Program-made: the position numbers and the translations under genes
The notes under the pieces: model-generated
Told to the model about the DNA's origin: nothing
The model's database searches: none
The model's input: only the letters and a program-made list of their open reading frames with translations
In this document: piece after piece, positions 3,913 through 59,973 of the stretch
Layout of the letters: each line of letters opens with the position of its first letter
Position numbering within the stretch: the first letter of the stretch is position 1
Virus record (IMG/VR): IMGVR_UViG_3300010403_000705
Coordinates: 248,001 to 312,000 of that record
Length of the DNA: 64,000 nt
Strand: one strand, 5' to 3'

Positions 3913-4062
3913 CCCATCCATGCGTCAATGGCTACGTGATCGTTATCGTCGGAGAGACCTGACCATCAAGCTGCGACGTAAGGAGTCAGGTCTTCGTCGG
4001 TTTCGAATCAAAGATGATCGGTATGCAATACCGCGAGAGCGGTGGCAACAGGAGCCCATCTG

Positions 4063-4284
4063 ATGTCAAGTGGTTTTAATTGCTACCTCAGTCAGGTCAA
4101 GTTGACCGTGGATGGCTACGAGCATGGACCGTGTGGCAAACATTGGGGCGTGGGTAAGCCACTGTACAAGATGGATATCAAGATGGCAGACTTCTGGAAG
4201 ACCGCCCATCTGCGCGCGGATGATCGTGAGGATGCCAAAAAGAAAGTGCTAAAGCAGTATCCTAAAGCGCTGTTCTTCATCTGA
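4063..4284 (+). CDS. hypothetical phage protein
   Basis: GGAG RBS; GY..G..WGVGKPLY motif. Confidence 0.65.
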   Translation: MSSGFNCYLSQVKLTVDGYEHGPCGKHWGVGKPLYKMDIKMADFWKTAHLRADDREDAKKKVLKQYPKALFFI

Positions 4285-4319
4285 TACCCATCTCTGTGTC
4301 TAAGTGAGGTCAAAGCATC

Positions 4320-4517
4320 ATGGCAAAGCCGGTGTGGCAGCAGAGGTTGCAGGACAAGCTGAATAGTAACCCGCTGTGTTTCGTCGGAGACACGCATCTG
4401 GTCAAGCACGTCTCTTGTCTCAAACAGGGTGAGAGCAAAGGAAAAAAGGTTACTCTGAGATTGGCGGTTAACTTCAGCTTCAATACCTGTGCGGAATGTA
4501 AGGTCTCGGTCAGGTAA
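4320..4517 (+). CDS. hypothetical protein
   Basis: GAGG RBS, ORF. Confidence 0.5.
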   Translation: MAKPVWQQRLQDKLNSNPLCFVGDTHLVKHVSCLKQGESKGKKVTLRLAVNFSFNTCAECKVSVR

Positions 4518-4530
4518 CGACGTGTGTCTG

Positions 4531-5004
4531 TAGGTGCGGAAGCGAGAACGCTTGGAAGGAACACCCGAAGGATTCGGTGGTAATTGCGTCCAGTTGGTAA
4601 GATACAGATCGGTTAAGTTCCGAGTCTGACACTGGGTCTATCACTCTGCTTCAGCAATAGAGTTGTACCTAATAAGCTAATCCAATTATCAAACCCATCT
4701 GGGTTGGTTGGAACGCGAGCTTGGGTTGAGCTGAAAAAAGAGATAGCAATCTGTTAACGCGATTGATGATGGTCCAATCGACAGGTCATACCGCTGTAAG
4801 ATCGGAAGTTTTGCGGCGGACATTGGAGAGTTTGAGTCTCTCCCATCAATCTCCCACTGACAGAATGAAACGCGGTTTTAATATTCTCCGGTAACCCCGG
4901 ATAGGTGTGGGGTCTGTGACAGCACCGAGGGAGCCCCATAGTTCTGTACAGTGACGTGTGAACGCACACGTCACCCTCATCCAAGCGTTTTCCCTTCCGC
5001 ATCT
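4531..5004 (+). ncRNA. candidate ~470-nt structured RNA with internal tRNA-like domain
   Basis: TAGGTGCGGAAG..AACGCTTGGA pairs with TCCAAGCGTT..CTTCCGCATCTA; internal cloverleaf-like fold 4761-4851; no + ORF. Confidence 0.55.
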
Positions 5005-5042
5005 AGAAACAACTCTAGCAACTCTTATCCGAGGCTGGCATC

Positions 5043-5378
5043 ATGTCAAAAGTTTCTGGTTTCGTTAACGTTGTCAGGGGTTACGTAGGCATCCTGTCTA
5101 AATTCGTCAGAAACTCATTGTTTCATGAATGCTCCAGCGTCGAGATGCTGAAAGAACGCCTGTCTCGCGGCAATTGGTGCCTTGCCCAGGCTTTCTACTG
5201 GCAGGATCTTTGTTTCATCAACCAAGTCGACGGTGGCGATGAATGGCTCGTCATCAAGGGCGATCTCGTGTTCGAGAGTTTGACTGTCGAGCCGATGATC
5301 GCTAGCGGTCGCTTCGACGACTTCCTTCGAAGGGTGATGACGGCGAGTCGTGAACAACTTCTAACGCTTCAATACTAG
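5043..5378 (+). CDS. hypothetical phage protein
   Basis: GAGG RBS; GNWCLAQAFY...INQVDGGDEWLVIK. Confidence 0.75.
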   Translation: MSKVSGFVNVVRGYVGILSKFVRNSLFHECSSVEMLKERLSRGNWCLAQAFYWQDLCFINQVDGGDEWLVIKGDLVFESLTVEPMIASGRFDDFLRRVMTASREQLLTLQY

Positions 5379-5439
5379 ATCTAAAGAGAACCCATCGACC
5401 AACCATTAATAGAGACCTTAGTAAAGGTAAAGAATAGCT

Positions 5440-5715
5440 ATGAGTTCCTATCAGGTCCTGGCGAGATTGGAATTGCCAGGCGTAAAGGATGATAATATCT
5501 CCTGTACTGTTTCCACGTTGGAAACAGGTCTTTCGAACGTAATGTCAGTAGTGCAGATCGGAGAAAAAGTTTGGCGAGAGATACATCCTCGTGCGCCTGA
5601 AGATGTGTGTGGGTTTCTGGACATGATGAAGAAATGTATCAAACGTGCCCATCACGATCTAGGAATGGCAAAAAAGGAACTTCAATTTCTCAATCTTGAT
5701 CCCAATCAGGAGTAA
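5440..5715 (+). CDS. hypothetical protein
   Basis: ORF followed by palindromic terminator. Confidence 0.65.
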   Translation: MSSYQVLARLELPGVKDDNISCTVSTLETGLSNVMSVVQIGEKVWREIHPRAPEDVCGFLDMMKKCIKRAHHDLGMAKKELQFLNLDPNQE

Positions 5716-5740
5716 AAAGACAGAAGCTAGTCCAGCGTGC

Positions 5741-5780
5741 AAAGAAGAGAGACGGTGCGTACGCACCGTCTCTCTTCTTT
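5741..5780. terminator. perfect 40-bp palindrome, bidirectional terminator-like
   Basis: AAAGAAGAGAGACGGTGCGT|ACGCACCGTCTCTCTTCTTT followed by T-rich tract. Confidence 0.7.
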
Positions 5781-5793
5781 GTTTTTAATTGGT

Positions 5794-5828
5794 TGGTATG
5801 AAGATTGCAAATTGCAAAGTCTAAGCCA
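5794..5828. promoter_or_regulatory. 35-bp dyad sigma54-like element
   Basis: TGGTAT-gaaga-TTGCA-aat-TGCA-N7-AGCCA. Confidence 0.75.
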
Positions 5829-5887
5829 ATCTATCGGAGACCCATCAACCAAACCTACCTTTGCGTGAAGGAAAGGAATTGATTTTC

Positions 5888-6142
5888 ATGACTCTGAGAC
5901 TGGATCAGTTTTATAAAGATTGTCTGGCTCGTTACATGCAAACAGGCGAGCGATATGGGCAAGCTGCCTTTAACCATTTGCTAGAGGTGCGCCCATCACT
6001 GGCAGAACAAGTTCGAGGAACAGAATGCGATCCCTTCCATTGCACTCGACAGGCTGATACCTCTGTTGCTCCGGCGGGGATGCGAAAGGTCTGGGATAAC
6101 TTCGTGGAATTCCTTTCCCAGCACTGGGATGATTCCGCTTAA
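5888..6142 (+). CDS. hypothetical phage protein
   Basis: AAGGA RBS; RYGQAAFN..L..RP....VRGT..DPF motif. Confidence 0.7.
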   Translation: MTLRLDQFYKDCLARYMQTGERYGQAAFNHLLEVRPSLAEQVRGTECDPFHCTRQADTSVAPAGMRKVWDNFVEFLSQHWDDSA

Positions 6143-6203: not shown

Positions 6204-6677
6204 ATGAAGACCGTCAAAGAGATTCTGATTGAGGCTTCCAATCTTCTTTCTGAGGATACATGGTATCAGGGATCTTTTTTCAATACACGATGGCAGGAAG
6301 ATACAGAGTGTACTGTGCTATGCTATTGCGCGCATGGCGCGGTTCAGGCTGTTGGTAATGAAAAAGTAGCTGAGATCTTGTCATCACCCATATGTATCGA
6401 GATTGCTGTGACCAGTGATGCACAGGATGTCGCGGGCGACACCCGAGCCCGTGACGCTTGGCGTCTGGGCGCCCAAAACACGCTTTTTGGGCTGTCTGTA
6501 CAAGACAACTGGAATTCCAGACCGTTCTTCTGTAACGATCCAACAATGGCAGCTCACTACGTTTTGGGTATGGTGGGCTTGACTTCTGTCTTTAACGATC
6601 TTGGTTCAACTACTTTTCAGATGATCAAGCAGAAGTTTACGCTGGCTATCGAGACCGCCAAACGGCTCGACATCTAA
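6204..6677 (+). CDS. hypothetical protein, paralog family A copy 1
   Basis: Shares W.QG..F, C.CAHGAV, HY.LGMVGLT..FND with 11321 and 13066. Confidence 0.8.
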   Translation: MKTVKEILIEASNLLSEDTWYQGSFFNTRWQEDTECTVLCYCAHGAVQAVGNEKVAEILSSPICIEIAVTSDAQDVAGDTRARDAWRLGAQNTLFGLSVQDNWNSRPFFCNDPTMAAHYVLGMVGLTSVFNDLGSTTFQMIKQKFTLAIETAKRLDI

Positions 6678-12824: not shown

Positions 12825-12912
12825 GGGCGAATGGCGAAACTGGTAGACGCAGTGGTTTCAAAAACCGCCGAGGTAAAATCTCGTGGGGGTTCGATTCCCC
12901 CTTTGCCCACCA
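12825..12912 (+). tRNA. tRNA-Leu(CAA)
   Basis: GGGCGAA/TTTGCCC acceptor, GTGGT-TTCAAAA-ACCGC anticodon arm, long V-arm, TTCGATT T-loop, encoded CCA. Confidence 0.9.
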
Positions 12913-12937: not shown

Positions 12938-13040
12938 GTCGAGCAGTGGCGGAAACGGATAGACGCTAAGGCAGTATGGCTGAGCTTAGTGATGATAAAC
13001 TATCACTAAGCATGCTGGTTCAAGTCCAGCCCTCGACACC
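12938..13040 (+). ncRNA. aberrant tRNA-like RNA (Leu-type D/T arms, no canonical anticodon arm, 10-bp V-arm)
   Basis: GTCGAG/CTCGAC acceptor, TGGCGGAA..GGATAGACGC, GCTGG-TTCAAGT-CCAGC, GCTTAGTGAT/ATCACTAAGC stem. Confidence 0.6.
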
Positions 13041-15493: not shown

Positions 15494-15866
15494 ACCTCAT
15501 CAAGCAATAAGCACCAAGAGATTGTCATGCCACATCAAAAAAGGATCCCAGGGATCCCATCGGATATATAAACCTATACGATACTTGCGAAATGCAGAAA
15601 GAAAAGGTTTAACATTATGTTCTTCACGTGATGTGAGCGCTAAACTCTGTCAATGGGCTTGGATTTAGCTTTATAGGTAGCTCTCAGTAAAAAGTGAGCT
15701 TAGGATACAAGCTACGTCTGGTAAGATTGACAGAGACTCTAAGAGGGCGGCGCTAACATAAAAAGCCCTGCTAGTTTGTATCACCCATCAAATTAGGAGA
15801 ATACCTAGGAGAATATCAGCCATCAATACGATGGCGCTAATCTCGGATTACCCTCTCACTTGGCGG

Positions 15867-15949
15867 CTGTAATTTGGGGGTTCGAATCCCTCTGTGCTTT
15901 AGGCATAGCTCAATCGGTAAGAGCAATCGCTTTTAAGCGATCATTACAG
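15867..15949 (+). ncRNA. circularly permuted tRNA-like module within a long ORF-free structured region
   Basis: Order T-arm, closed acceptor hairpin, D-arm, anticodon arm, enclosed by CTGTAAT/ATTACAG. Confidence 0.7.
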
Positions 15950-16669
15950 TGTACCTTGTGAGTAAGGCGAAACTATTAGCTCTCCTATCAAAGCTCCCAT
16001 CCAAACACAGGATAAATCAATCCAAGTGCAATTCCTGTTTCCTGTTTTTTTGGAACCGTAAAAACGGTATGATTTACTCCTGACATAATTGTACGCCCGA
16101 TTCACTAACTAGGGCTATAGATACCATAGGGATAACTTAACGCTCTCCCATCAGATCGTAGCGTTACACGGGATGCAAGAGGCTTGCTGGGCGGACAAGG
16201 ATCCATCCGCAATATTGAAGATGCTGAGCATGCCATATATCACCAGGGTTTCCGGCTCAATGGGTTTGGAAACACTTTGATAGATGCAGATCATGACTGA
16301 ATACTCATTCAATAAAACCACCTAACACTTGCTATAACACCCATCATATAAGGCGGGTTAGATAAAGCTGAGGAAACCGTTGGGAAGTTGAGTTTTGATC
16401 GAGACCTTATGATGATTGCGCCTCGCGCATGAGGGTTGGTAGGATACCCATCTATCTACCAAGGCAATGTAGATCAAGACAACCGATATACCACGTCTTG
16501 AAGAACGTGGATCGCCAACGGAGCATTAGGGCTACGCTCAGCGCCCGCCTAATGTTTAACTTGTGGTTAGTGTATAGTTAACAAGAGACCCTTGTATTGT
16601 ACCCATCAATCTTGTTGATTATGTACTGTTCACAAGCTCATTGAAAAGTTATCATATCGAGGTGATATC

Positions 16670-19249: not shown

Positions 19250-19329
19250 GACCTTCTGGCGTTAACTGTTAAGACTTGAAAGTGGCGGGTAGCACAACGC
19301 TCCCGCCACTTTTTTGTTTTATTATGAAT

Positions 19330-19364
19330 TGGTATAGTATTTGCAATATACATTAACCATGCCA
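19330..19364. promoter_or_regulatory. 35-bp dyad sigma54-like element
   Basis: TGGTAT-agtat-TTGCA-ata-TACA-N7-TGCCA after terminator 19279-19312. Confidence 0.75.
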
Positions 19365-19698
19365 ATTCTATCTCCCATCGTTTTTCCTACATCAGTAAGG
19401 TAAGACCTAACAAGACATTTAAGAGGGTCAAGAAAAATGAGATTCAGGGAGATTGGTAATTTGGGGGTTGCTGTCTTGATTGCCGAAGATGTCCCATCGC
19501 TCAAGATGGATCAGACAGCTTGGCTTTATGCCATAGGCTGTGTGTCAGCTATCTTCAGTGGTATTACCATGCTTTCCACCATTGTTTTTTAACCCATCAT
19601 CGATAAGTTTAAACAACTGTTATGAATACAAGTATCAACATCCTTCATGTTTCGATGATTTTGGTGGGCTTGTTGTCTCTGTTGGTTCCCATCCTGTC

Positions 19699-23569: not shown

Positions 23570-24036
23570 GTTATTTTCCCATCATCATAATGATCTCTGA
23601 TAACTTACTATATGGCGCTATCAAAAGCGTTCCTCACTAAGCGTTGCCTATCTTTGCGCTGGTGAATGTTATAAGGTCGGAACAATCCATCATGTTTTCT
23701 ATCTGTGGAGCCGATTGCACATCGGACGGTCGAATCGCGGGTCTAGAACCACGACTAAGAGCTGAAAAAGGCGAAAGCGGCGGTCAGCCAACCCATCCGT
23801 TGGAGGCATTGAAGCAGAGGAGAATGATTGGTGGTTTATTTCGTTAAATGTCGAATCTAGTTGGCAGAGGATATGCGGATGCACTTTAATTCGAGCTAGG
23901 CACATGCTCAATTGAAGTGGGAGGGGTTCGATTCCCATCCTGAAATATCATCGGTGCAAAGAGTATGCTTAACTAGGTGCCATTCAACATTTAACGAAAC
24001 AAGCTACCCATCAAAAACTAGACGTAATGAATAACC

Positions 24037-30594: not shown

Positions 30595-30629
30595 CGGCAC
30601 AGATTTTGCATAGTGCATAATACATGCCG
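30595..30629. promoter_or_regulatory. 35-bp dyad sigma54-like element
   Basis: CGGCAC-agatt-TTGCA-tag-TGCA-N7-TGCCG. Confidence 0.75.
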
Positions 30630-30999
30630 CATTTTTCCCATCCAGAATCAAACATAACTAAAAGTATGGATAACACTACAGTTCATATTATCAATTGGTC
30701 TATCATGCGCTTTGTGGGACCAGGATATGATCCCATTGTATTGCATGGTGATTTTTGCGGACATCCGAGTCTTGATCGTGGCACGCCTAGTTCTTTTTTA
30801 TCATTCGATAAGAAAAATTTGCTTGGCAAAAGTATAAGCGGAAAAGTCTATATTTTGGAAGCTTGTTCTTTTCGTCCGACTGGGTTTGCGCGCACGCTGG
30901 AAGATGCGTGTGATTGGATCGAGCAGAATTGGGTGAGAAAAAAATAAAATAATTTACCGCCCATCTATCAGATTTATTTTTCTAATATGAAGGATACTT

Positions 31000-39097: not shown

Positions 39098-39189
39098 TAG
39101 AAGACACGCGCCTAAAATTTAATAGGCGCGCACTTTGCAGAACCGCAATCTTACCAAAGGCTAGCGATTTTGCAAGTTTTCTTATGAAT

Positions 39190-39224
39190 TGGTATATATT
39201 TTGCATAGTGCAATTAGTATGCCA
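39190..39224. promoter_or_regulatory. 35-bp dyad sigma54-like element (last copy seen)
   Basis: TGGTAT-atatt-TTGCA-tag-TGCA-N7-TGCCA. Confidence 0.8.
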
Positions 39225-39281
39225 CATCTTTCCCATCACCTAATTGATTAGGACTTCCGAACATCTGAAAGAAAATTGATT

Positions 39282-39887: not shown

Positions 39888-39970
39888 GCCGAAGTGGTGG
39901 AATGGCAGACACAGCGGACTCAAAATCCGCCGCCCATAAGGGCATGAGGGTTCAAGTCCCTCCTTCGGTA
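39888..39970 (+). tRNA. tRNA-Leu(CAA), second copy
   Basis: GCCGAAG/CTTCGGT, GCGGA-CTCAAAA-TCCGC, long V-arm, TTCAAGT T-loop. Confidence 0.92.
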
Positions 39971-39994
39971 CTAATCAATTTTAGGAGATGGTAT

Positions 39995-40810
39995 ATGTCT
40001 AAAGGTAAAAAATCAAAATCCATTACTATTCTATACGGTTTGCCAGGAAGTGGTAAATCTACATACGCCAAGGATACTGGTATTTCTGTAGTAGATGCTG
40101 ATGAAATTGGACATAAATTCTTTGCATCTACAAATGAGAGATTTGCGTACTTAGCTAGCAAAGTAGAGTATGTATTGACCTCTAAATATACAGACTCTGT
40201 TATTATTGATGGATTATTTACCACCAATGAACAGTTGAGAAGGATTATAGATTCTCTTTCTTTTCTTTCGGAAAAATGGCAAATCACATTTAAATTGGTT
40301 TACTGGGTCGAGGATCGAGCAGCGTGTCTTGTTAATGATCAAGGAAGGAGAGCAAAAAGTTCCGCTATTTCAATTAATAATCTTCCTTTTGAAAAGCCTG
40401 ATCCTTCAGTAGTTCCTGAGTTTTTCGTTAGCAAAAATAGAATTAAAGAAATGCAAGTAGTGCAAAGATCTCCTGCTCAAATTTGGGCGAAATCACTTGA
40501 TCTTGATTCAAATAAAATGGAATTAAGATCTGAAAGTTGGTCTTTAGGAGGAACATCCGGCAATTGTTGGGACAATGAGTTGAGAAGAATCAGTCCAAGT
40601 TCGCCACTAGAATTTGTGGAGTTCGACGAGCTATTGCAAAAGGTTTGTCCTAACCTTTCTTATTTGCAATATAAAGAGATCAATAGATCTTGTTGCAGAC
40701 TTGATGAACACGAATCAACTGATTATTATAGTGGTTCGGAAACAATTGTCCAACATGTGTGCGATATAAATGCATTATATAATAAACTTTCTAACTTAGG
40801 GATTATTTAA
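39995..40810 (+). CDS. P-loop kinase (PNK-like), paralog of 34832
   Basis: AGGAG RBS; ILYGLPGSGKST; same C-terminal domain (W.LGG..G.CWD, DYY.G). Confidence 0.82.
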   Translation: MSKGKKSKSITILYGLPGSGKSTYAKDTGISVVDADEIGHKFFASTNERFAYLASKVEYVLTSKYTDSVIIDGLFTTNEQLRRIIDSLSFLSEKWQITFKLVYWVEDRAACLVNDQGRRAKSSAISINNLPFEKPDPSVVPEFFVSKNRIKEMQVVQRSPAQIWAKSLDLDSNKMELRSESWSLGGTSGNCWDNELRRISPSSPLEFVEFDELLQKVCPNLSYLQYKEINRSCCRLDEHESTDYYSGSETIVQHVCDINALYNKLSNLGII

Positions 40811-42540: not shown

Positions 42541-42632
42541 GGGAGCATAGCTCAATGGTTAGAGCAACCGCCTTATAAGCGGTTTACCGGCTGATTACCG
42601 GAAGCGTGGGGGTTCAAGTCCCTCTGCTCCTA
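42541..42632 (+). tRNA. tRNA with TAT anticodon (Ile) and a long variable arm
   Basis: GGGAGCA/TGCTCCT, GCTC..GAGC, ACCGC-CTTATAA-GCGGT, CCGG/CCGG V-stem, GGGGG-TTCAAGT-CCCTC. Confidence 0.8.
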
Positions 42633-42944
42633 CTAAGACCCATCGGCTTACATCTTTAGGTGAATAATTATGGATACAGGAACTATATCATATCATCCTG
42701 ATAATATAGGCGGAAAGCTTATTATTAGCGTTATGTCAAATGGTAAACTTGCAATAGATGTAAAATCACATGGATATAATCTTTACATGTTTACTTTTGA
42801 TTTGGAGTCAGCCAAGAATTTGAGAGATGCTCTTTGTTCTGCCATTGAACAAATGGCAATTAACATAAATTTTCCGTCAGATTCATAATCATCTTCCTGC
42901 TATCTTTTTATAAGAGCAAAGTGATTGTTGAGAGTAGACTTTCC

Positions 42945-47605: not shown

Positions 47606-48179
47606 AAGACTCAAAAATGCGCGACTTATTTACTCCGGGCACGGTGTTTGTTTTGGGCGTTCTAATTCTATATTTTGGTGCACATATTGCACTTCAATAT
47701 ATAGCAACCCATCCAGAATATCCAGGGCAGTTACCTTGTAAATGTGAGTCTAAGTGAATCTCCAATAGATTTTGTTCTCCCGCCTTTAATGCTGGATCCA
47801 CAAGTAAAGCATTATTGTTTCGTCTAAGTTGCTCCACGCAACATCCATCATTGTCAATGATGTGCGACGTGACATAAAAATATGACAGAGATTTTCCACC
47901 CAATTGCTTTTGCTTTGGGCAAAGAGGATATTATTTAGTATTTAATCCATGAATTATGCGAGGTTGAAATTGGTTTCTTCCTGAGTATAAACTCTGCTTG
48001 AAGAGATTTATCTTAACGTAAACCTACCAATTCCTCTAGTTCCAGAGAATGGATTTGATAACGCATAACTAGGAATGATAAAAATAATAAATAGTTTCGG
48101 CATTTGTTCAATATAGCAATTAAAAGCAACACTCGGCTCTGGATACTTCAGACATCTAAGTCATATTTTTAAGACTTCT

Positions 48180-48438
48180 TGCACTGAACTCGCGCAGGTC
48201 TAAATAAACCTCTCATGGTGATACAGAATCACTTCTGCAACCGGAAATGGGTTTAGCCTGGGTCAATCTGTTCATGATGACAGATACATAGTAGATAGCC
48301 AAAGTGATAGGCTAACTCTGACAAAGATAGCATGGTAGACCCATTTATCTACGTCGGAGTCTTGTCTTACTACAGTAATGTTCAGAATTTTATTCTGAAT
48401 TAGGGGCGCGAGCTTTTGAAGTAGATGACCTAAGTGCA
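48180..48438 (+). ncRNA. candidate pseudoknotted structured RNA
   Basis: Three long-range pairings plus several internal hairpins in an ORF-free region; T tract follows. Confidence 0.45.
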
Positions 48439-48478
48439 TGTTTTTTTGATGACCAGTACAATTTTTAGAGGATGAATT

Positions 48479-49025: not shown

Positions 49026-49100
49026 GGGAGTTGTAATGCTCAATGGTAGAGCTACCAATAGAAGCTTGGTGGTTGAAGGTTCAACTCCTTCTGACTCCCC
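49026..49100 (+). tRNA. aberrant tRNA-Phe(GAA)-like
   Basis: GGGAGTTG/TGACTCCC, GCTC..GAGC, ACCAA-TAGAAGC-TTGGT, GAAGG-TTCAACT-CCTTC. Confidence 0.6.
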
Positions 49101-54195: not shown

Positions 54196-54283
54196 GCTAA
54201 CTCTGGGCATTGGCGAGCCCAAGGCGAAGTAAACGCCCCGTCAAGTAAAATTGGCTGAGTTAGTTCGAGTCTAACAGTTGGCA
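54196..54283 (+). tRNA. aberrant tRNA-Tyr(GTA)-like
   Basis: GCTAACT/AGTTGGC, GGGC..GCCC D-arm, GGCG-AAGTAAA-CGCC, long V-arm, GTTAG-TTCGAGT-CTAAC. Confidence 0.65.
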
Positions 54284-59896: not shown

Positions 59897-59973
59897 GCGT
59901 GTTGACGTCAATGGTGGCGTAATGTTATCTTGTCTCGATAACATTGACGGTTCGAATCCGTGGACACGTCCCA
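59897..59973 (+). tRNA. aberrant tRNA-Asp(GTC)-like with a 9-bp anticodon stem
   Basis: GCGTGTT/GACACGT, AATGTTATC-TTGTCTC-GATAACATT, ACGG-TTCGAAT-CCGT, 3' CCCA. Confidence 0.55.

What the first reader, a model, noticed from the sequence alone, without database searches (positions are those of the whole stretch)
4531..5004. Closed ~470-nt RNA containing a tRNA-like domain with a 12-bp anticodon stem
Seen: the ends pair over about 22 bp (TAGGTGCGGAAG-cgag-AACGCTTGGA with TCCAAGCGTT-ttcc-CTTCCGCATCTA). Inside, 4761-4851 folds tRNA-like: GATTGATG/CATCAATC acceptor, TGGTCCAATCGACAGGTC D-like segment, an extended stem CCGCTGTAAGAT/GTTTTGCGGCGG, and T-arm GAGAG-TTTGAGT-CTCTC. Another hairpin is GTGACGTGTG/CACACGTCAC. 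Inference: a second tRNA-mimic-bearing ncRNA, suggesting a recurrent design in this phage.
Basis: partly seen in the sequence, partly recalled or inferred. Interest (0 to 1): 0.62.

Follow-up and report, generated by a model that had tools for sequence, protein, structure and literature searches.

The report
Orphan structured phage RNA with tRNA-like arm
A 474-base gene-free stretch of a ~447-kb phage genome folds far better than chance into an end-paired RNA with one tRNA-shaped arm, but no relative was found in any collection searched, so it stays a promising, unconfirmed non-coding RNA candidate.

Summary
Window 4531-5004 lies in a 525-nt gap with stop codons of all three kinds in every + frame. 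As RNA the + strand folds at -181.7 kcal/mol (z -7.2); the - strand reaches only -164.2 (z -4.9). The ends form a 27-bp duplex (-48.8 kcal/mol; shuffles -18.3 +/- 3.7). Bases 4761-4851 form the described cloverleaf: 8-bp acceptor, D-like hairpin, 12-bp stem capped by a 5-nt loop, and a T-arm that aligns with the phage's own tRNAs.

The tRNA likeness is only partial. ARAGORN calls a class II tRNA-Leu(UAA) only at 90% of its threshold, and Rfam finds nothing. The decoding fold is 19 kcal/mol worse than the 12-bp-stem fold, so this is not a working tRNA.

Every homologue search returned only the source contig. Covariation therefore cannot be tested. The closest syntenic relative lacks the element together with the two downstream genes and their terminator.

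Two other end-paired RNAs with tRNA parts occur in the window (15796-15997, weakly YrlA-like; 23822-24016), so "recurrent design" is supported.

My best reading is a + strand structured RNA, probably cut out of a polycistronic transcript at its terminal duplex, with a tRNA-derived arm acting as a protein-binding mimic. Function is inferred, not shown.

The parts
4531..5004 (+). Whole end-paired structured RNA candidate (474 nt)
   Evidence: MFE -181.7 kcal/mol, z -7.18. The - strand gives -164.2, z -4.91. Stops of all three types in all + frames.
4532..4559 (+). 5' strand of the terminal duplex (11 + 13 + 3 bp, one C.C mismatch, two G.U pairs)
   Evidence: duplex -48.8 kcal/mol, z -8.3 against shuffles.
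4975..5004 (+). 3' strand of the terminal duplex
4562..4579 (+). Small hairpin next to the terminal duplex
   Evidence: pair probability 0.5-0.8.
4582..4589 (+). 5' strand of the 8-bp helix (pairs with 4870-4877) that closes the central three-arm domain
   Evidence: P 0.90.
4590..4635 (+). Arm 1 of the central domain (hairpin)
4638..4746 (+). Arm 2 of the central domain: long, interrupted 109-nt arm
   Evidence: helix probabilities 0.70-0.97.
4747..4867 (+). Arm 3: the tRNA-like arm, including its 7-bp extension helix 4750-4756/4858-4864
   Evidence: z -3.93.
4761..4851 (+). tRNA-like cloverleaf: acceptor 4761-4768/4844-4851, D-like hairpin 4769-4789, 12-bp stem 4791-4819 with loop CGGAA, 5-nt variable segment, T-arm 4825-4843
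4870..4877 (+). 3' strand of the central-domain closing helix
4888..4900 (+). Short hairpin CCGG/CCGG
   Evidence: P 0.98.
4901..4947 (+). Imperfect hairpin
   Evidence: P 0.5-0.94.
4951..4974 (+). Perfect 10-bp hairpin with a 4-nt loop
   Evidence: P 1.00.
5043..5378 (+). Downstream 111-aa gene of the same indel block. Its family occurs in other mobile contexts.
5440..5715 (+). Orphan 91-aa ORF of the same indel block
5740..5786 (+). Perfect 21-bp hairpin plus T run: the intrinsic terminator that ends the block

Best explanation
The element is a + strand, non-coding, highly structured RNA of about 470 nt. It is native to this huge-phage lineage and is read as part of the rightward polycistronic transcript. 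No terminator lies between it and the two genes that follow.

Inferred mechanism:
- The 27-bp terminal duplex is the kind of two-turn double-stranded stem that RNase III cuts. It would release, or at least insulate, a compact RNA.
- The interior of that RNA is a three-arm domain. One arm is a tRNA-derived module.
- The module keeps an acceptor/T-arm stack and a T-loop that can still meet the D-like loop: G18 with U55, and A19:U56 in place of the usual G19:C56.
- Its anticodon arm is replaced by a 12-bp helix, so it cannot decode. It can only present the tRNA 'elbow' and acceptor to tRNA-binding proteins such as RNase P, T-loop modifiers, the CCA-adding enzyme or RNA-repair enzymes. It would act as a scaffold or decoy, much as Y RNAs use their tRNA-like module.

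What is shown: the structure, its strandedness, its non-coding status, and the tRNA-like T-arm and junction. What is inferred: transcription as a unit, cleavage, and the binding partner.
For: - Thermodynamics: z -7.18 for the + strand, interior z -3.07, tRNA-like arm z -3.93, terminal duplex z -8.3.
- RNA rather than DNA, and + rather than - strand: 165 pairs with 18 G.U on +, against 150 pairs with 8 G.U on -. The 1x1 loops of the + fold contain no A.C mismatch. With DNA parameters the two strands are about equal.
- Non-coding.
- Every gene called here lies on the + strand. No terminator follows the element, and the next one is at 5740-5786.
- tRNA relation: the T-arm and acceptor 3' half align with phage tRNAs better than shuffles do, at p <= 0.006 for four tRNAs. 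ARAGORN at 90% threshold calls 4763-4851; that threshold gives 0.6 false hits per 64-kb shuffled window, or about 0.002 for this site and strand.
- Not a decoder: the class II cloverleaf scores -13.4 kcal/mol and the 12-bp-stem fold -32.4.
- Native to the lineage: the element carries two copies of the lineage's polar hexamer CCCATC, which is the local genome density. About 0.06 copies would be expected in unrelated DNA.
- Recurrent design: elements B and C, and a tRNA-like gene without an anticodon loop in relative L007.
- RNA-repair context in the window: an RNA ligase and several AAA_33 kinases.
Against: - No homologue was found, so there is no covariation and no evidence of selection beyond the fold itself.
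- The closest syntenic relative, L006, lacks the element, so it is dispensable for the lineage.
- There are no expression data.
- Rfam's tRNA, YrlA, tmRNA, RNase P, GOLLD and ROOL models all fail on it.
- The D-arm is not significantly tRNA-like.
- The acceptor plus T stack is 14 bp rather than 12, and the acceptor helix continues into more helix. Both would hinder RNase P.
- No Ro60/TROVE-sized gene lies in the window.
Confidence: 0.45

Rival explanations
1. It is a cis-acting leader or processing element of the inserted gene block (element, 111-aa gene, 91-aa gene, terminator), not a trans-acting RNA. The long stem would be an RNase III site that separates the block's mRNA from the upstream message, and the folded 5' region would stabilise that mRNA.
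For: The element, the two genes and the terminator are present or absent together relative to L006. No terminator separates the element from the genes. The 3' strand of the stem ends 38 nt before the start codon, and the GAGG ribosome-binding site is left free. A sigma-70-like site lies inside the element at 4857-4884.
Against: About 420 nt of ornate interior with a tRNA-like junction is far more than a processing site needs. Other members of the 111-aa family have no such leader. The stem does not touch the ribosome-binding site, so no regulatory switch is apparent.
Confidence: 0.2
2. It is a decayed tRNA gene, or a remnant of a tRNA cluster, with no present function. The tRNA-like arm would be a pseudogene, and the rest would be spacer that happens to fold.
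For: tRNA genes sit in intergenic slots throughout this lineage. Relative L007 has a tRNA-Lys gene 11 nt after the small Cys-rich ORF that follows the homologue of window ORF 4042-4284, which is roughly the same slot. The + strand of the window has four sub-threshold tRNA-like hits, where the block-shuffled windows average about 0.6 for both strands together. The arm has the length of a class II tRNA.
Against: Neutral decay does not create a 27-bp terminal duplex (z -8.3), a 12-bp helix made with four G.U pairs, or an overall z of -7.2. All mismatches are of the RNA-tolerated kind on the transcribed strand.
Confidence: 0.12
3. It is a Y RNA in the strict sense: a Ro60/Rsr-bound RNA whose terminal stem binds the Ro ring and whose tRNA-like module recruits an exoribonuclease.
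For: It has the terminal stem plus tRNA-like module architecture. A weak YrlA match occurs elsewhere in the same window. YrlA RNAs are known in phages (PMC4201824).
Against: It is 474 nt, against 80-130 nt for characterised Y RNAs. There is no GNCGAAN0-1G motif and no YrlA hit at E <= 10. The module is in normal tRNA order and joined through its acceptor stem, not permuted. No TROVE-sized gene lies within 4 kb or anywhere in the window.
Confidence: 0.07
4. It is a miniature inverted-repeat transposable element (non-autonomous DNA transposon). The 'terminal stem' would be its 26-nt terminal inverted repeats, flanked by TA on each side.
For: Inverted arms 4525-4556/4980-5011 are 84% complementary, with TA just outside the GRTGCGGAAG ends. 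It lies in an indel relative to L006.
Against: A degenerate pattern matching both arms finds only this one element in 2.9 million viral contigs, 185,579 species genomes and 241 million metagenome records. The absence in L006 includes two genes and a terminator, so it is not a clean empty site. TA is palindromic and may simply be part of the repeat. The G.U asymmetry favours one RNA strand. The element has the lineage's CCCATC density.
Confidence: 0.06
5. It is a DNA-level hairpin, such as a single-strand promoter (Frpo/ssi-like) carried along with the 111-aa gene from the leading region of a conjugative element, or a replication or recombination hairpin.
For: The 111-aa family occurs beside SSB, ParE, DUF932 and RadC genes in conjugative-element-like contexts. 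Frpo elements are structured non-coding stretches upstream of such genes (PMC11541004). With DNA parameters both strands fold well, with z -4.8 and -5.7.
Against: The gene-regulatory regions searched for Frpo/ssi elements were 50-350 bp, and the predicted structures place -35/-10 elements within the folded DNA. Here the fold is branched, and the only promoter-like hexamers fall in different helices. Other family members carry no similar sequence. The RNA-specific G.U pattern argues against it. The cumulative GC skew shows no turn here.
Confidence: 0.03

Closest known systems
Bacterial and phage Y RNAs (YrlA, Rfam RF02553; Yrn1)
   Same: The 5' and 3' ends pair into a long stem. An internal module mimics tRNA with T- and D-like arms. 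They are encoded by some phages. A weakly YrlA-like RNA lies 11 kb away in the same window.
   Different: This element is four times larger. The tRNA-like module is in normal gene order and attached through its acceptor stem. In YrlA the stem-loop in the acceptor position is capped. There is no GNCGAAN0-1G motif, no Ro60 gene nearby and no covariance-model hit.
tmRNA (RF00023), including those of huge phages
   Same: The size class is similar. It has a tRNA-like domain with a T-arm, a degenerate D region, and a long helix where the anticodon stem would be.
   Different: In tmRNA the RNA ends form the acceptor stem with a CCA tail, and the long helix leads into pseudoknots and a tag reading frame. 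Here the ends form a separate 27-bp duplex, the tRNA-like domain is internal, and its long helix is capped. ARAGORN's tmRNA search found nothing even at a lowered threshold, and Rfam is negative.
Large ornate phage-associated RNAs (ROOL, GOLLD)
   Same: They are RNAs of several hundred nucleotides with multi-branched structure (PMC12286853, listed). From my own knowledge of the earlier literature, they are found in phages and prophages, often next to tRNA genes, and their function is unknown.
   Different: There is no match to either Rfam family. This element has no detectable family at all. Nothing is known about whether it forms oligomers.
tRNA-like processing signals (RNase P substrates such as M. 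smegmatis YrlA, phage P1 C4 and P4 CI RNAs, mascRNA)
   Same: An acceptor/T-arm stack with a T-loop sits inside a longer transcript. M. smegmatis YrlA is cut by RNase P and receives CCA. The other examples are from my own knowledge.
   Different: The stack is 14 bp rather than 12. The helix continues beyond the acceptor stem. The 3' flank reads UCCCA rather than NCCA. Cleavage was not tested.
Class II tRNA-Leu
   Same: The arm is 89 nt long and has a T-arm, a 7-8-bp acceptor stem and a 5-nt variable connector. ARAGORN calls tRNA-Leu(UAA) at 90% threshold.
   Different: It is below ARAGORN's default threshold and gets no Rfam tRNA score. It has G in place of U33, a mismatched anticodon stem and no G18-G19 doublet. 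The decoding fold is 19 kcal/mol less stable than the 12-bp-stem fold.
Bacterial MITEs (e.g. Correia/NEMIS, IS630-type with TA duplication)
   Same: It has roughly 26-nt terminal inverted repeats and TA at both ends, it is intergenic, and it can fold as RNA.
   Different: It is a single copy in every collection scanned. There is no clean empty site.

Membership tests
tRNA (RF00005) | Score at or above the family threshold with a tRNA covariance model or ARAGORN at default settings | tested here: not met
   No Rfam hit at E <= 10, even in a 106-nt search. ARAGORN at default settings finds nothing and calls it only at -ps90.
tRNA (RF00005) | Cloverleaf with a 7-bp acceptor stem, a 5-bp T stem and a 7-nt T-loop of the form UUCRANY | tested here: inconclusive
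   The four-way junction is present, with connectors of 0/1/5/0 nt. The T-loop is UUUGAGU (C56 replaced by U). The stems are 8 and 6 bp, giving a 14-bp stack.
tRNA (RF00005) | 5-bp anticodon stem with a 7-nt loop and U33 | tested here: not met
   There is a 12-bp helix with a 5-nt loop. The alternative fold has G33 and a C.U mismatch and is 19 kcal/mol worse.
YrlA / Y RNA (RF02553) | Covariance-model match | tested here: not met
   No hit at E <= 10. The only YrlA hit in the window is at 15874-15924.
YrlA / Y RNA (RF02553) | Ro-binding motif GNCGAAN0-1G near the 5' end (PMC4201824) | tested here: not met
   A regular-expression search of 4518-5042 finds none.
YrlA / Y RNA (RF02553) | Within 4 kb of a TROVE-domain (Ro60/Rsr) gene on the same strand | tested here: not met
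   Of the ORFs between 1979 and 12097, Pfam matched only DUF6197, AAA_33 and a DEAD/DEAH helicase. The two ~520-aa ORFs of the window are a UvrD helicase and a COOH-NH2 ligase. The rest of the 447-kb contig could not be examined.
YrlA / Y RNA (RF02553) | Long stem formed by the 5' and 3' ends plus a tRNA-like module | tested here: met
tmRNA (RF00023) | Ends form the acceptor stem with CCA; a tag reading frame and pseudoknots are present | tested here: not met
   ARAGORN's tmRNA search found nothing at default or lowered threshold. Rfam finds nothing here. The tRNA-like domain is internal.
ROOL / GOLLD / other Rfam large RNAs (RNase P, group I and II introns, OLE, 6S) | Covariance-model match | tested here: not met
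MITE | Multiple copies with conserved terminal inverted repeats | tested here: not met
   A degenerate pattern for both arms finds only this locus in the viral, genome and metagenome collections.
MITE | Target-site duplication and a matching empty site | tested here: inconclusive
   TA flanks both ends, but TA is palindromic. L006 lacks the element together with 0.86 kb of adjacent genes.
Frpo/ssi single-strand promoter | Structured non-coding stretch within the 50-350 bp regulatory regions searched for Frpo/ssi, with -35/-10 hexamers inside the folded structure (PMC11541004) | tested here: not met
   This is a branched 474-nt fold. The only promoter-like hexamers (4857-4884) lie in different helices.
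RNase III / RNase P substrate | Cleavage by the enzyme | not testable with these tools
   Only the geometry can be assessed: a 27-bp duplex, and an acceptor/T stack with a T-loop.

The most novel reading that the evidence does not exclude
The element is the founding member of a new class of large phage non-coding RNAs. In this class a tRNA-derived module that cannot decode is built into a ~470-nt scaffold with paired ends. It would be one of a set of at least three tRNA-mimic RNAs (4531-5004, 15796-15997, 23822-24016) that this huge-phage lineage uses to recruit or divert tRNA-processing, tRNA-repair or tRNA-targeting defence proteins of the host.
Probability: 0.25. Interest if true: 0.72.

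Novelty: new variant of a known kind. Interest (0 to 1): 0.5.

Why it matters
Huge phages carry many tRNAs and RNA-repair genes, and hosts attack phage translation by cutting tRNAs. A phage RNA that shows the tRNA elbow and acceptor stem but cannot decode would be a candidate decoy or scaffold in that conflict. It would extend tRNA mimicry by Y RNAs and tmRNA to a much larger, differently wired RNA.

Three such RNAs in 64 kb suggest a deliberate toolkit rather than an accident. If the element were confirmed, it would give a concrete RNA for pull-downs and structural work.

If it is instead only a processing stem with a dead tRNA inside, it still shows how tRNA genes decay into structured spacers in phage operons.

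Tried and rejected
**Known RNA families.** Rfam at gathering thresholds on the whole window, at E <= 1 on the whole window, and at E <= 10 on 951-nt and 106-nt stretches gave nothing meaningful for the element.

**Similar DNA in annotated phages.** There was none, either for the element or for the first 20 kb of the window.

**Paralogues in the window or fetched loci.**
- blastn and nhmmer found none.
- A covariance model of the tRNA-like arm found none.

**Pattern scans of public collections.**
- T-arm 19-mer: only the source contig.
- Degenerate pattern for both terminal arms, in viral, genome and metagenome collections: only the source contig, or nothing.
- Loop-only cloverleaf pattern: only the source contig.
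- Purine/pyrimidine-degenerate T-arm pattern in genomes: one Actinomycetota hit, which is an unrelated 30-nt hairpin.

**Pseudo-protein trick.** I searched the 82-aa - strand ORF over the element against 1.84 billion representatives. The aim was to catch homologous DNA that had been miscalled as genes. The only hit was a spurious tandem-repeat protein.

**Flanking genes as handles.**
- The 111-aa family is widespread but never syntenic with such an RNA.
- The 91-aa ORF is an orphan.
- The relatives found through the 459-aa gene lack the element.

**Readings considered and rejected.**
- Hidden protein gene under stop-codon recoding: all three stop types occur in all frames.
- Group II intron: a GUGCG lies near the 5' end, but there is no domain V and no Rfam hit, and the intron reading does not account for the 27-bp pairing of the two ends.
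- Group I intron, RNase P RNA, 6S RNA and T-box: no Rfam match.
- Retron RNA: no reverse transcriptase gene is adjacent.

**Neighbouring proteins.** Pfam, PHROGs, NCBIfam and PDB sequence searches of the immediate neighbours were uninformative.
Full report
**Where it sits.** The window is bases 240001-304000 of a huge-phage contig (IMGVR_UViG_3300010403_000705, 432,844 bp; the same genome as Ga0134123_10000001, 447,633 bp). Every gene called here is on the + strand. The finding lies in a 525-nt ORF-free gap, 4518-5042. Upstream is a 65-aa ORF (4320-4517) and downstream a 111-aa ORF (5043-5378). All three + frames of the gap hold 7-13 stop codons, and TAA, TAG and TGA all occur, so reassigning a single stop codon cannot make it coding.

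**Check of the observation.**
- The terminal duplex is 11 + 13 + 3 bp (4532-4559 with 4975-5004).
- An 8-bp helix (4582-4589/4870-4877) closes a three-arm central domain. Its arms are a hairpin (4590-4635), a long interrupted arm (4638-4746) and the tRNA-like arm (4747-4867).
- Three 3' hairpins follow: 4888-4900, 4901-4947 and the perfect 10-bp hairpin 4951-4974.

The whole element folds at -181.7 kcal/mol, with z -7.18 against dinucleotide shuffles. The interior alone gives z -3.07 and the tRNA-like arm z -3.93. The terminal duplex scores -48.8 kcal/mol. Shuffled arms average -18.3 +/- 3.7 (best of 2000: -34.7), and the best of 655 equally spaced segment pairs from the same window is -33.9.

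**RNA or DNA, and which strand.** With RNA parameters the + strand beats the - strand by 17.5 kcal/mol (z -7.18 against -4.91). The + fold has 165 pairs including 18 G.U pairs. Four of these lie in the 12-bp stem and two in the terminal duplex. The - fold has 150 pairs with 8 G.U. None of the single-base mismatches inside + strand helices is A.C. Every transition that departs from Watson-Crick pairing is therefore of the kind RNA tolerates on the transcribed strand. With DNA parameters the two strands are about equal (z -4.8 and -5.7). This pattern points to a + strand RNA rather than a DNA-level palindrome.

**The tRNA-like arm.** Bases 4761-4851 form a four-way junction:
- an 8-bp acceptor-like stem;
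- a D-like hairpin with loop AAUCGACA;
- a one-base connector;
- a 12-bp helix capped by CGGAA;
- a 5-nt variable segment;
- a 6-bp T-like stem with loop UUUGAGU.

The T-arm and acceptor 3' half align with the T-arms of the phage's own tRNAs and those of its relatives. Four tRNAs score better than shuffled controls at p <= 0.006. The 5' half does not.

The T-loop differs from the tRNA consensus only at C56, which is U here. The D-like loop has G-A where tRNAs have G18-G19. The G18-U55 contact could therefore be kept, and G19:C56 could be replaced by A19:U56. This is a reading of one sequence, not a demonstrated covariation.

ARAGORN finds nothing at default settings. At 90% of its threshold it calls 4763-4851 a class II tRNA-Leu(UAA). 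At that threshold, block-shuffled windows give 0.6 hits per 64 kb on both strands, so a false hit at this site and strand has a probability of about 0.002. Rfam's tRNA model gives no score at all, even in a 106-nt search. ARAGORN's decoding cloverleaf has G at position 33 and a mismatched anticodon stem. It scores -13.4 kcal/mol, against -32.4 for the 12-bp-stem fold.

My conclusion is that the arm is most likely tRNA-derived. It keeps the acceptor/T half and has lost the anticodon arm as a decoder. 'tRNA-like' is fair for the T-arm and the junction and overstated for the D-arm.

**Homologues.** None were found.
- The element and the first 20 kb of the window have no match in 50,697 annotated phages.
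- Exact and degenerate patterns for the T-arm, both terminal arms and the cloverleaf loops return only the source contig from 2.9 million viral contigs, 185,579 species genomes and 241 million metagenome records. One genome hit is an unrelated 30-nt hairpin.
- The 82-aa pseudo-ORF over the element, searched against 1.84 billion protein representatives, returned only a spurious repeat protein.
- A covariance model of the arm finds no paralogue in the window or in related loci.

Covariation, the decisive test, could not be applied.

**Comparative context.** The closest syntenic relative is L006, a Logan contig whose proteins in this region match at roughly 40-85% identity in tblastx. It has the homologues of ORF 4320-4517 and ORF 5861-6142 only 10 nt apart. 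The window has 1.34 kb between them: the element, the 111-aa gene, an orphan 91-aa ORF and a perfect 21-bp terminator at 5740-5786. The element therefore belongs to a variable block.

The 111-aa family occurs next to an ISL3 transposase, RadC, SSB, ParE and DUF932 genes in unrelated elements, and never with a similar RNA. The gene and the RNA are thus not a conserved pair.

A more distant relative, L007, has a tRNA-Lys gene 11 nt after the small Cys-rich ORF that follows the homologue of ORF 4042-4284, which is about the same slot. L007 also carries a tRNA-like gene whose anticodon arm is a mini-hairpin.

The element contains two copies of CCCATC. This hexamer occurs 183 times on the + strand and 3 times on the - strand of the window, and it shows the same bias in L006-L008. 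Two copies in 474 nt is the native density. About 0.06 would be expected in foreign DNA. This argues that the element is old in, or arose within, this lineage.

**Recurrent design.** The window holds other end-paired RNAs.
- Element B (15796-15997, z -4.1) has nested terminal stems. Its core consists of a T-arm, a capped acceptor-like hairpin, a D-arm and an anticodon-like hairpin. It gives a 28-bit partial YrlA hit.
- Element C (23822-24016, z -6.4) is a rod of about 45 bp carrying a canonical T-arm, with GUCGAA in its 5' strand.
- Element D (47860-48186, z -3.4) is end-paired, with no tRNA part noted.

The three tRNA-bearing RNAs are wired differently and share no sequence.

**What it most likely is and does.** I commit to a + strand structured non-coding RNA, at about 0.6 that the RNA fold itself is functional. 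No terminator separates it from the downstream genes, so it is presumably made within a polycistronic transcript.

The 27-bp two-turn duplex is the geometry of RNase III processing stems, as in rRNA operons and T7 early mRNA (established knowledge). The acceptor/T stack with its T-loop is what RNase P, TruB and the CCA-adding enzyme recognise. M. smegmatis YrlA shows that such mimics are really processed (PMC4201824).

The specific model is excision at the terminal duplex, with the tRNA-derived arm serving as a handle or decoy for a tRNA-binding protein. The window's RNA ligase and polynucleotide-kinase-like genes fit an RNA-repair setting. This model is inference, at about 0.25-0.3. The overall confidence of 0.45 reflects the broader statement.

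**Rivals.** These are a cis-acting leader or processing site for the block (0.2), a dead tRNA with chance structure (0.12), a true Ro-bound Y RNA (0.07), a MITE (0.06) and a DNA hairpin or single-strand promoter (0.03). The evidence for and against each is given in the rivals section.

**Comparison with known systems.** The element works most like a Y RNA or YrlA (terminal stem plus tRNA mimic), and in part like the tRNA-like domain of tmRNA. It fails the membership tests of both. There is no model hit, no Ro motif, no Ro60 gene nearby and the wrong wiring for YrlA. For tmRNA there is no terminal acceptor stem with CCA and no tag frame. It matches no Rfam large-RNA family (ROOL, GOLLD, RNase P, introns). 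I rate it a new variant of a known kind, a phage tRNA-mimic RNA. It could be upgraded if a family is found.

**Verdict.** This is a real, statistically strong, strand-specific RNA structure with a partly tRNA-like arm. It is an orphan, dispensable in the nearest relative, and untested for expression. Interest is 0.5. The structure and the trio of tRNA-mimic RNAs are intriguing, but without homologues or transcripts the functional claim remains a hypothesis.

Noticed in passing
whole window; also L006, L007, L008: The hexamer CCCATC occurs 183 times on the + strand and 3 times on the - strand, with about 7.7 expected per strand. It lies in genes (all three frames) and in spacers, with an excess 20-50 nt upstream of ORF starts and sometimes as CCCATCATG. 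Density is about 1 per 210 bp in 1-31 kb and much lower in the AT-richer 31-64 kb part. Relatives L006 (37:0), L007 (63:1) and L008 (34:0) share the bias; unrelated loci do not. It is a lineage-wide polar motif of unknown function. Chi-like, primase, RNA polymerase or RNA-processing signals are guesses. A literature search found nothing.
   Followed up: partly
window 15796-15997: An end-paired RNA of about 200 nt (z -4.1) with nested terminal stems. Its core is a permuted tRNA-like unit: T-arm, capped acceptor-like hairpin, D-arm and anticodon-like hairpin. It gives a partial Rfam YrlA hit (28.3 bits, below the gathering score of 69). No Ro60-sized gene lies in the window.
   Followed up: partly
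window 23822-24016: A 195-nt end-paired RNA (z -6.4). It is a rod of about 45 bp enclosing a hairpin and a canonical T-arm (GGGGUUCGAUUCCC). GUCGAA in its 5' strand resembles part of the Ro-binding motif GNCGAAN0-1G.
   Followed up: partly
window 47860-48186: A 327-nt AT-rich region closed by 31-nt inverted arms (74% complementary), z -3.4. It lies inside the 721-nt ORF-free gap 47758-48478.
   Followed up: partly
window 12965-13040, 49027-49100, 59897-59973: There are further sub-threshold tRNA-like hits on the + strand at ARAGORN 90% threshold. The one at 49027-49099 is a good Rfam tRNA (41 bits, Phe-GAA) that ARAGORN misses at default settings. With 4763-4851 that makes four such hits on the + strand, where shuffled windows average about 0.6 on both strands together.
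   Followed up: partly
window 42541-42633: The tRNA-Ile(UAU) gene has a roughly 21-nt stem-loop insertion in the variable region, which is unusual for an Ile tRNA. The Leu(CAA) genes at 12825 and 39888 and the Tyr gene at 54196 also carry long variable arms. The Tyr gene is called by ARAGORN but not listed by Rfam.
   Followed up: no
window 19322-19379, 30607-30642, 39182-39237: A repeated intergenic element of about 55 nt (TTATGAATTGGTATA ... TGCATAGTGCA ... ATGCCNCAT.TTTCCCATC). At 19270-19321 a terminator-like hairpin lies just upstream of it. It is possibly a phage promoter or regulatory module. The surrounding gaps fold with z -6.3 and -4.6.
   Followed up: partly
window 4518-5860 against L006 2557-2567: A 1.34-kb block is absent from the closest relative: the structured RNA, a 111-aa gene, an orphan 91-aa ORF and a perfect 21-bp terminator at 5740-5786. 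In L006 the flanking genes are 10 nt apart. The DUF6197 gene (6204-6677) is also placed differently in L006.
   Followed up: yes
L007 4287-4354 (and the weak YrlA hit at 4239-4337): The relative carries a tRNA-like gene (Rfam tRNA, 43.8 bits) whose anticodon arm is replaced by a 4-bp mini-hairpin (ACGU-UGCA-ACGU). It is another tRNA mimic in the clade that cannot decode.
   Followed up: partly
L002 ~2680-2720 and L017 ~2080-2125: A conserved non-coding motif (GGG.CAAGAAAAA.C.GGTGGT.TGCAATTGGGGCCACCCG) lies in non-coding DNA of two unrelated loci that carry the 111-aa gene family. L017 has conjugative-element-like neighbours (SSB, ParE, DUF932). It has no relation to the finding.
   Followed up: no
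window ~31000: G+C drops from 0.44-0.56 on the left to 0.34-0.43 on the right, together with the fall in CCCATC density. This suggests two genome modules with different histories or different expression classes.
   Followed up: no
window 39888-39971 against ORF 39902-40810: The mechanical ORF call 39902-40810 (AAA_33 kinase-like) starts inside the tRNA-Leu gene. The true start must lie further downstream.
   Followed up: no
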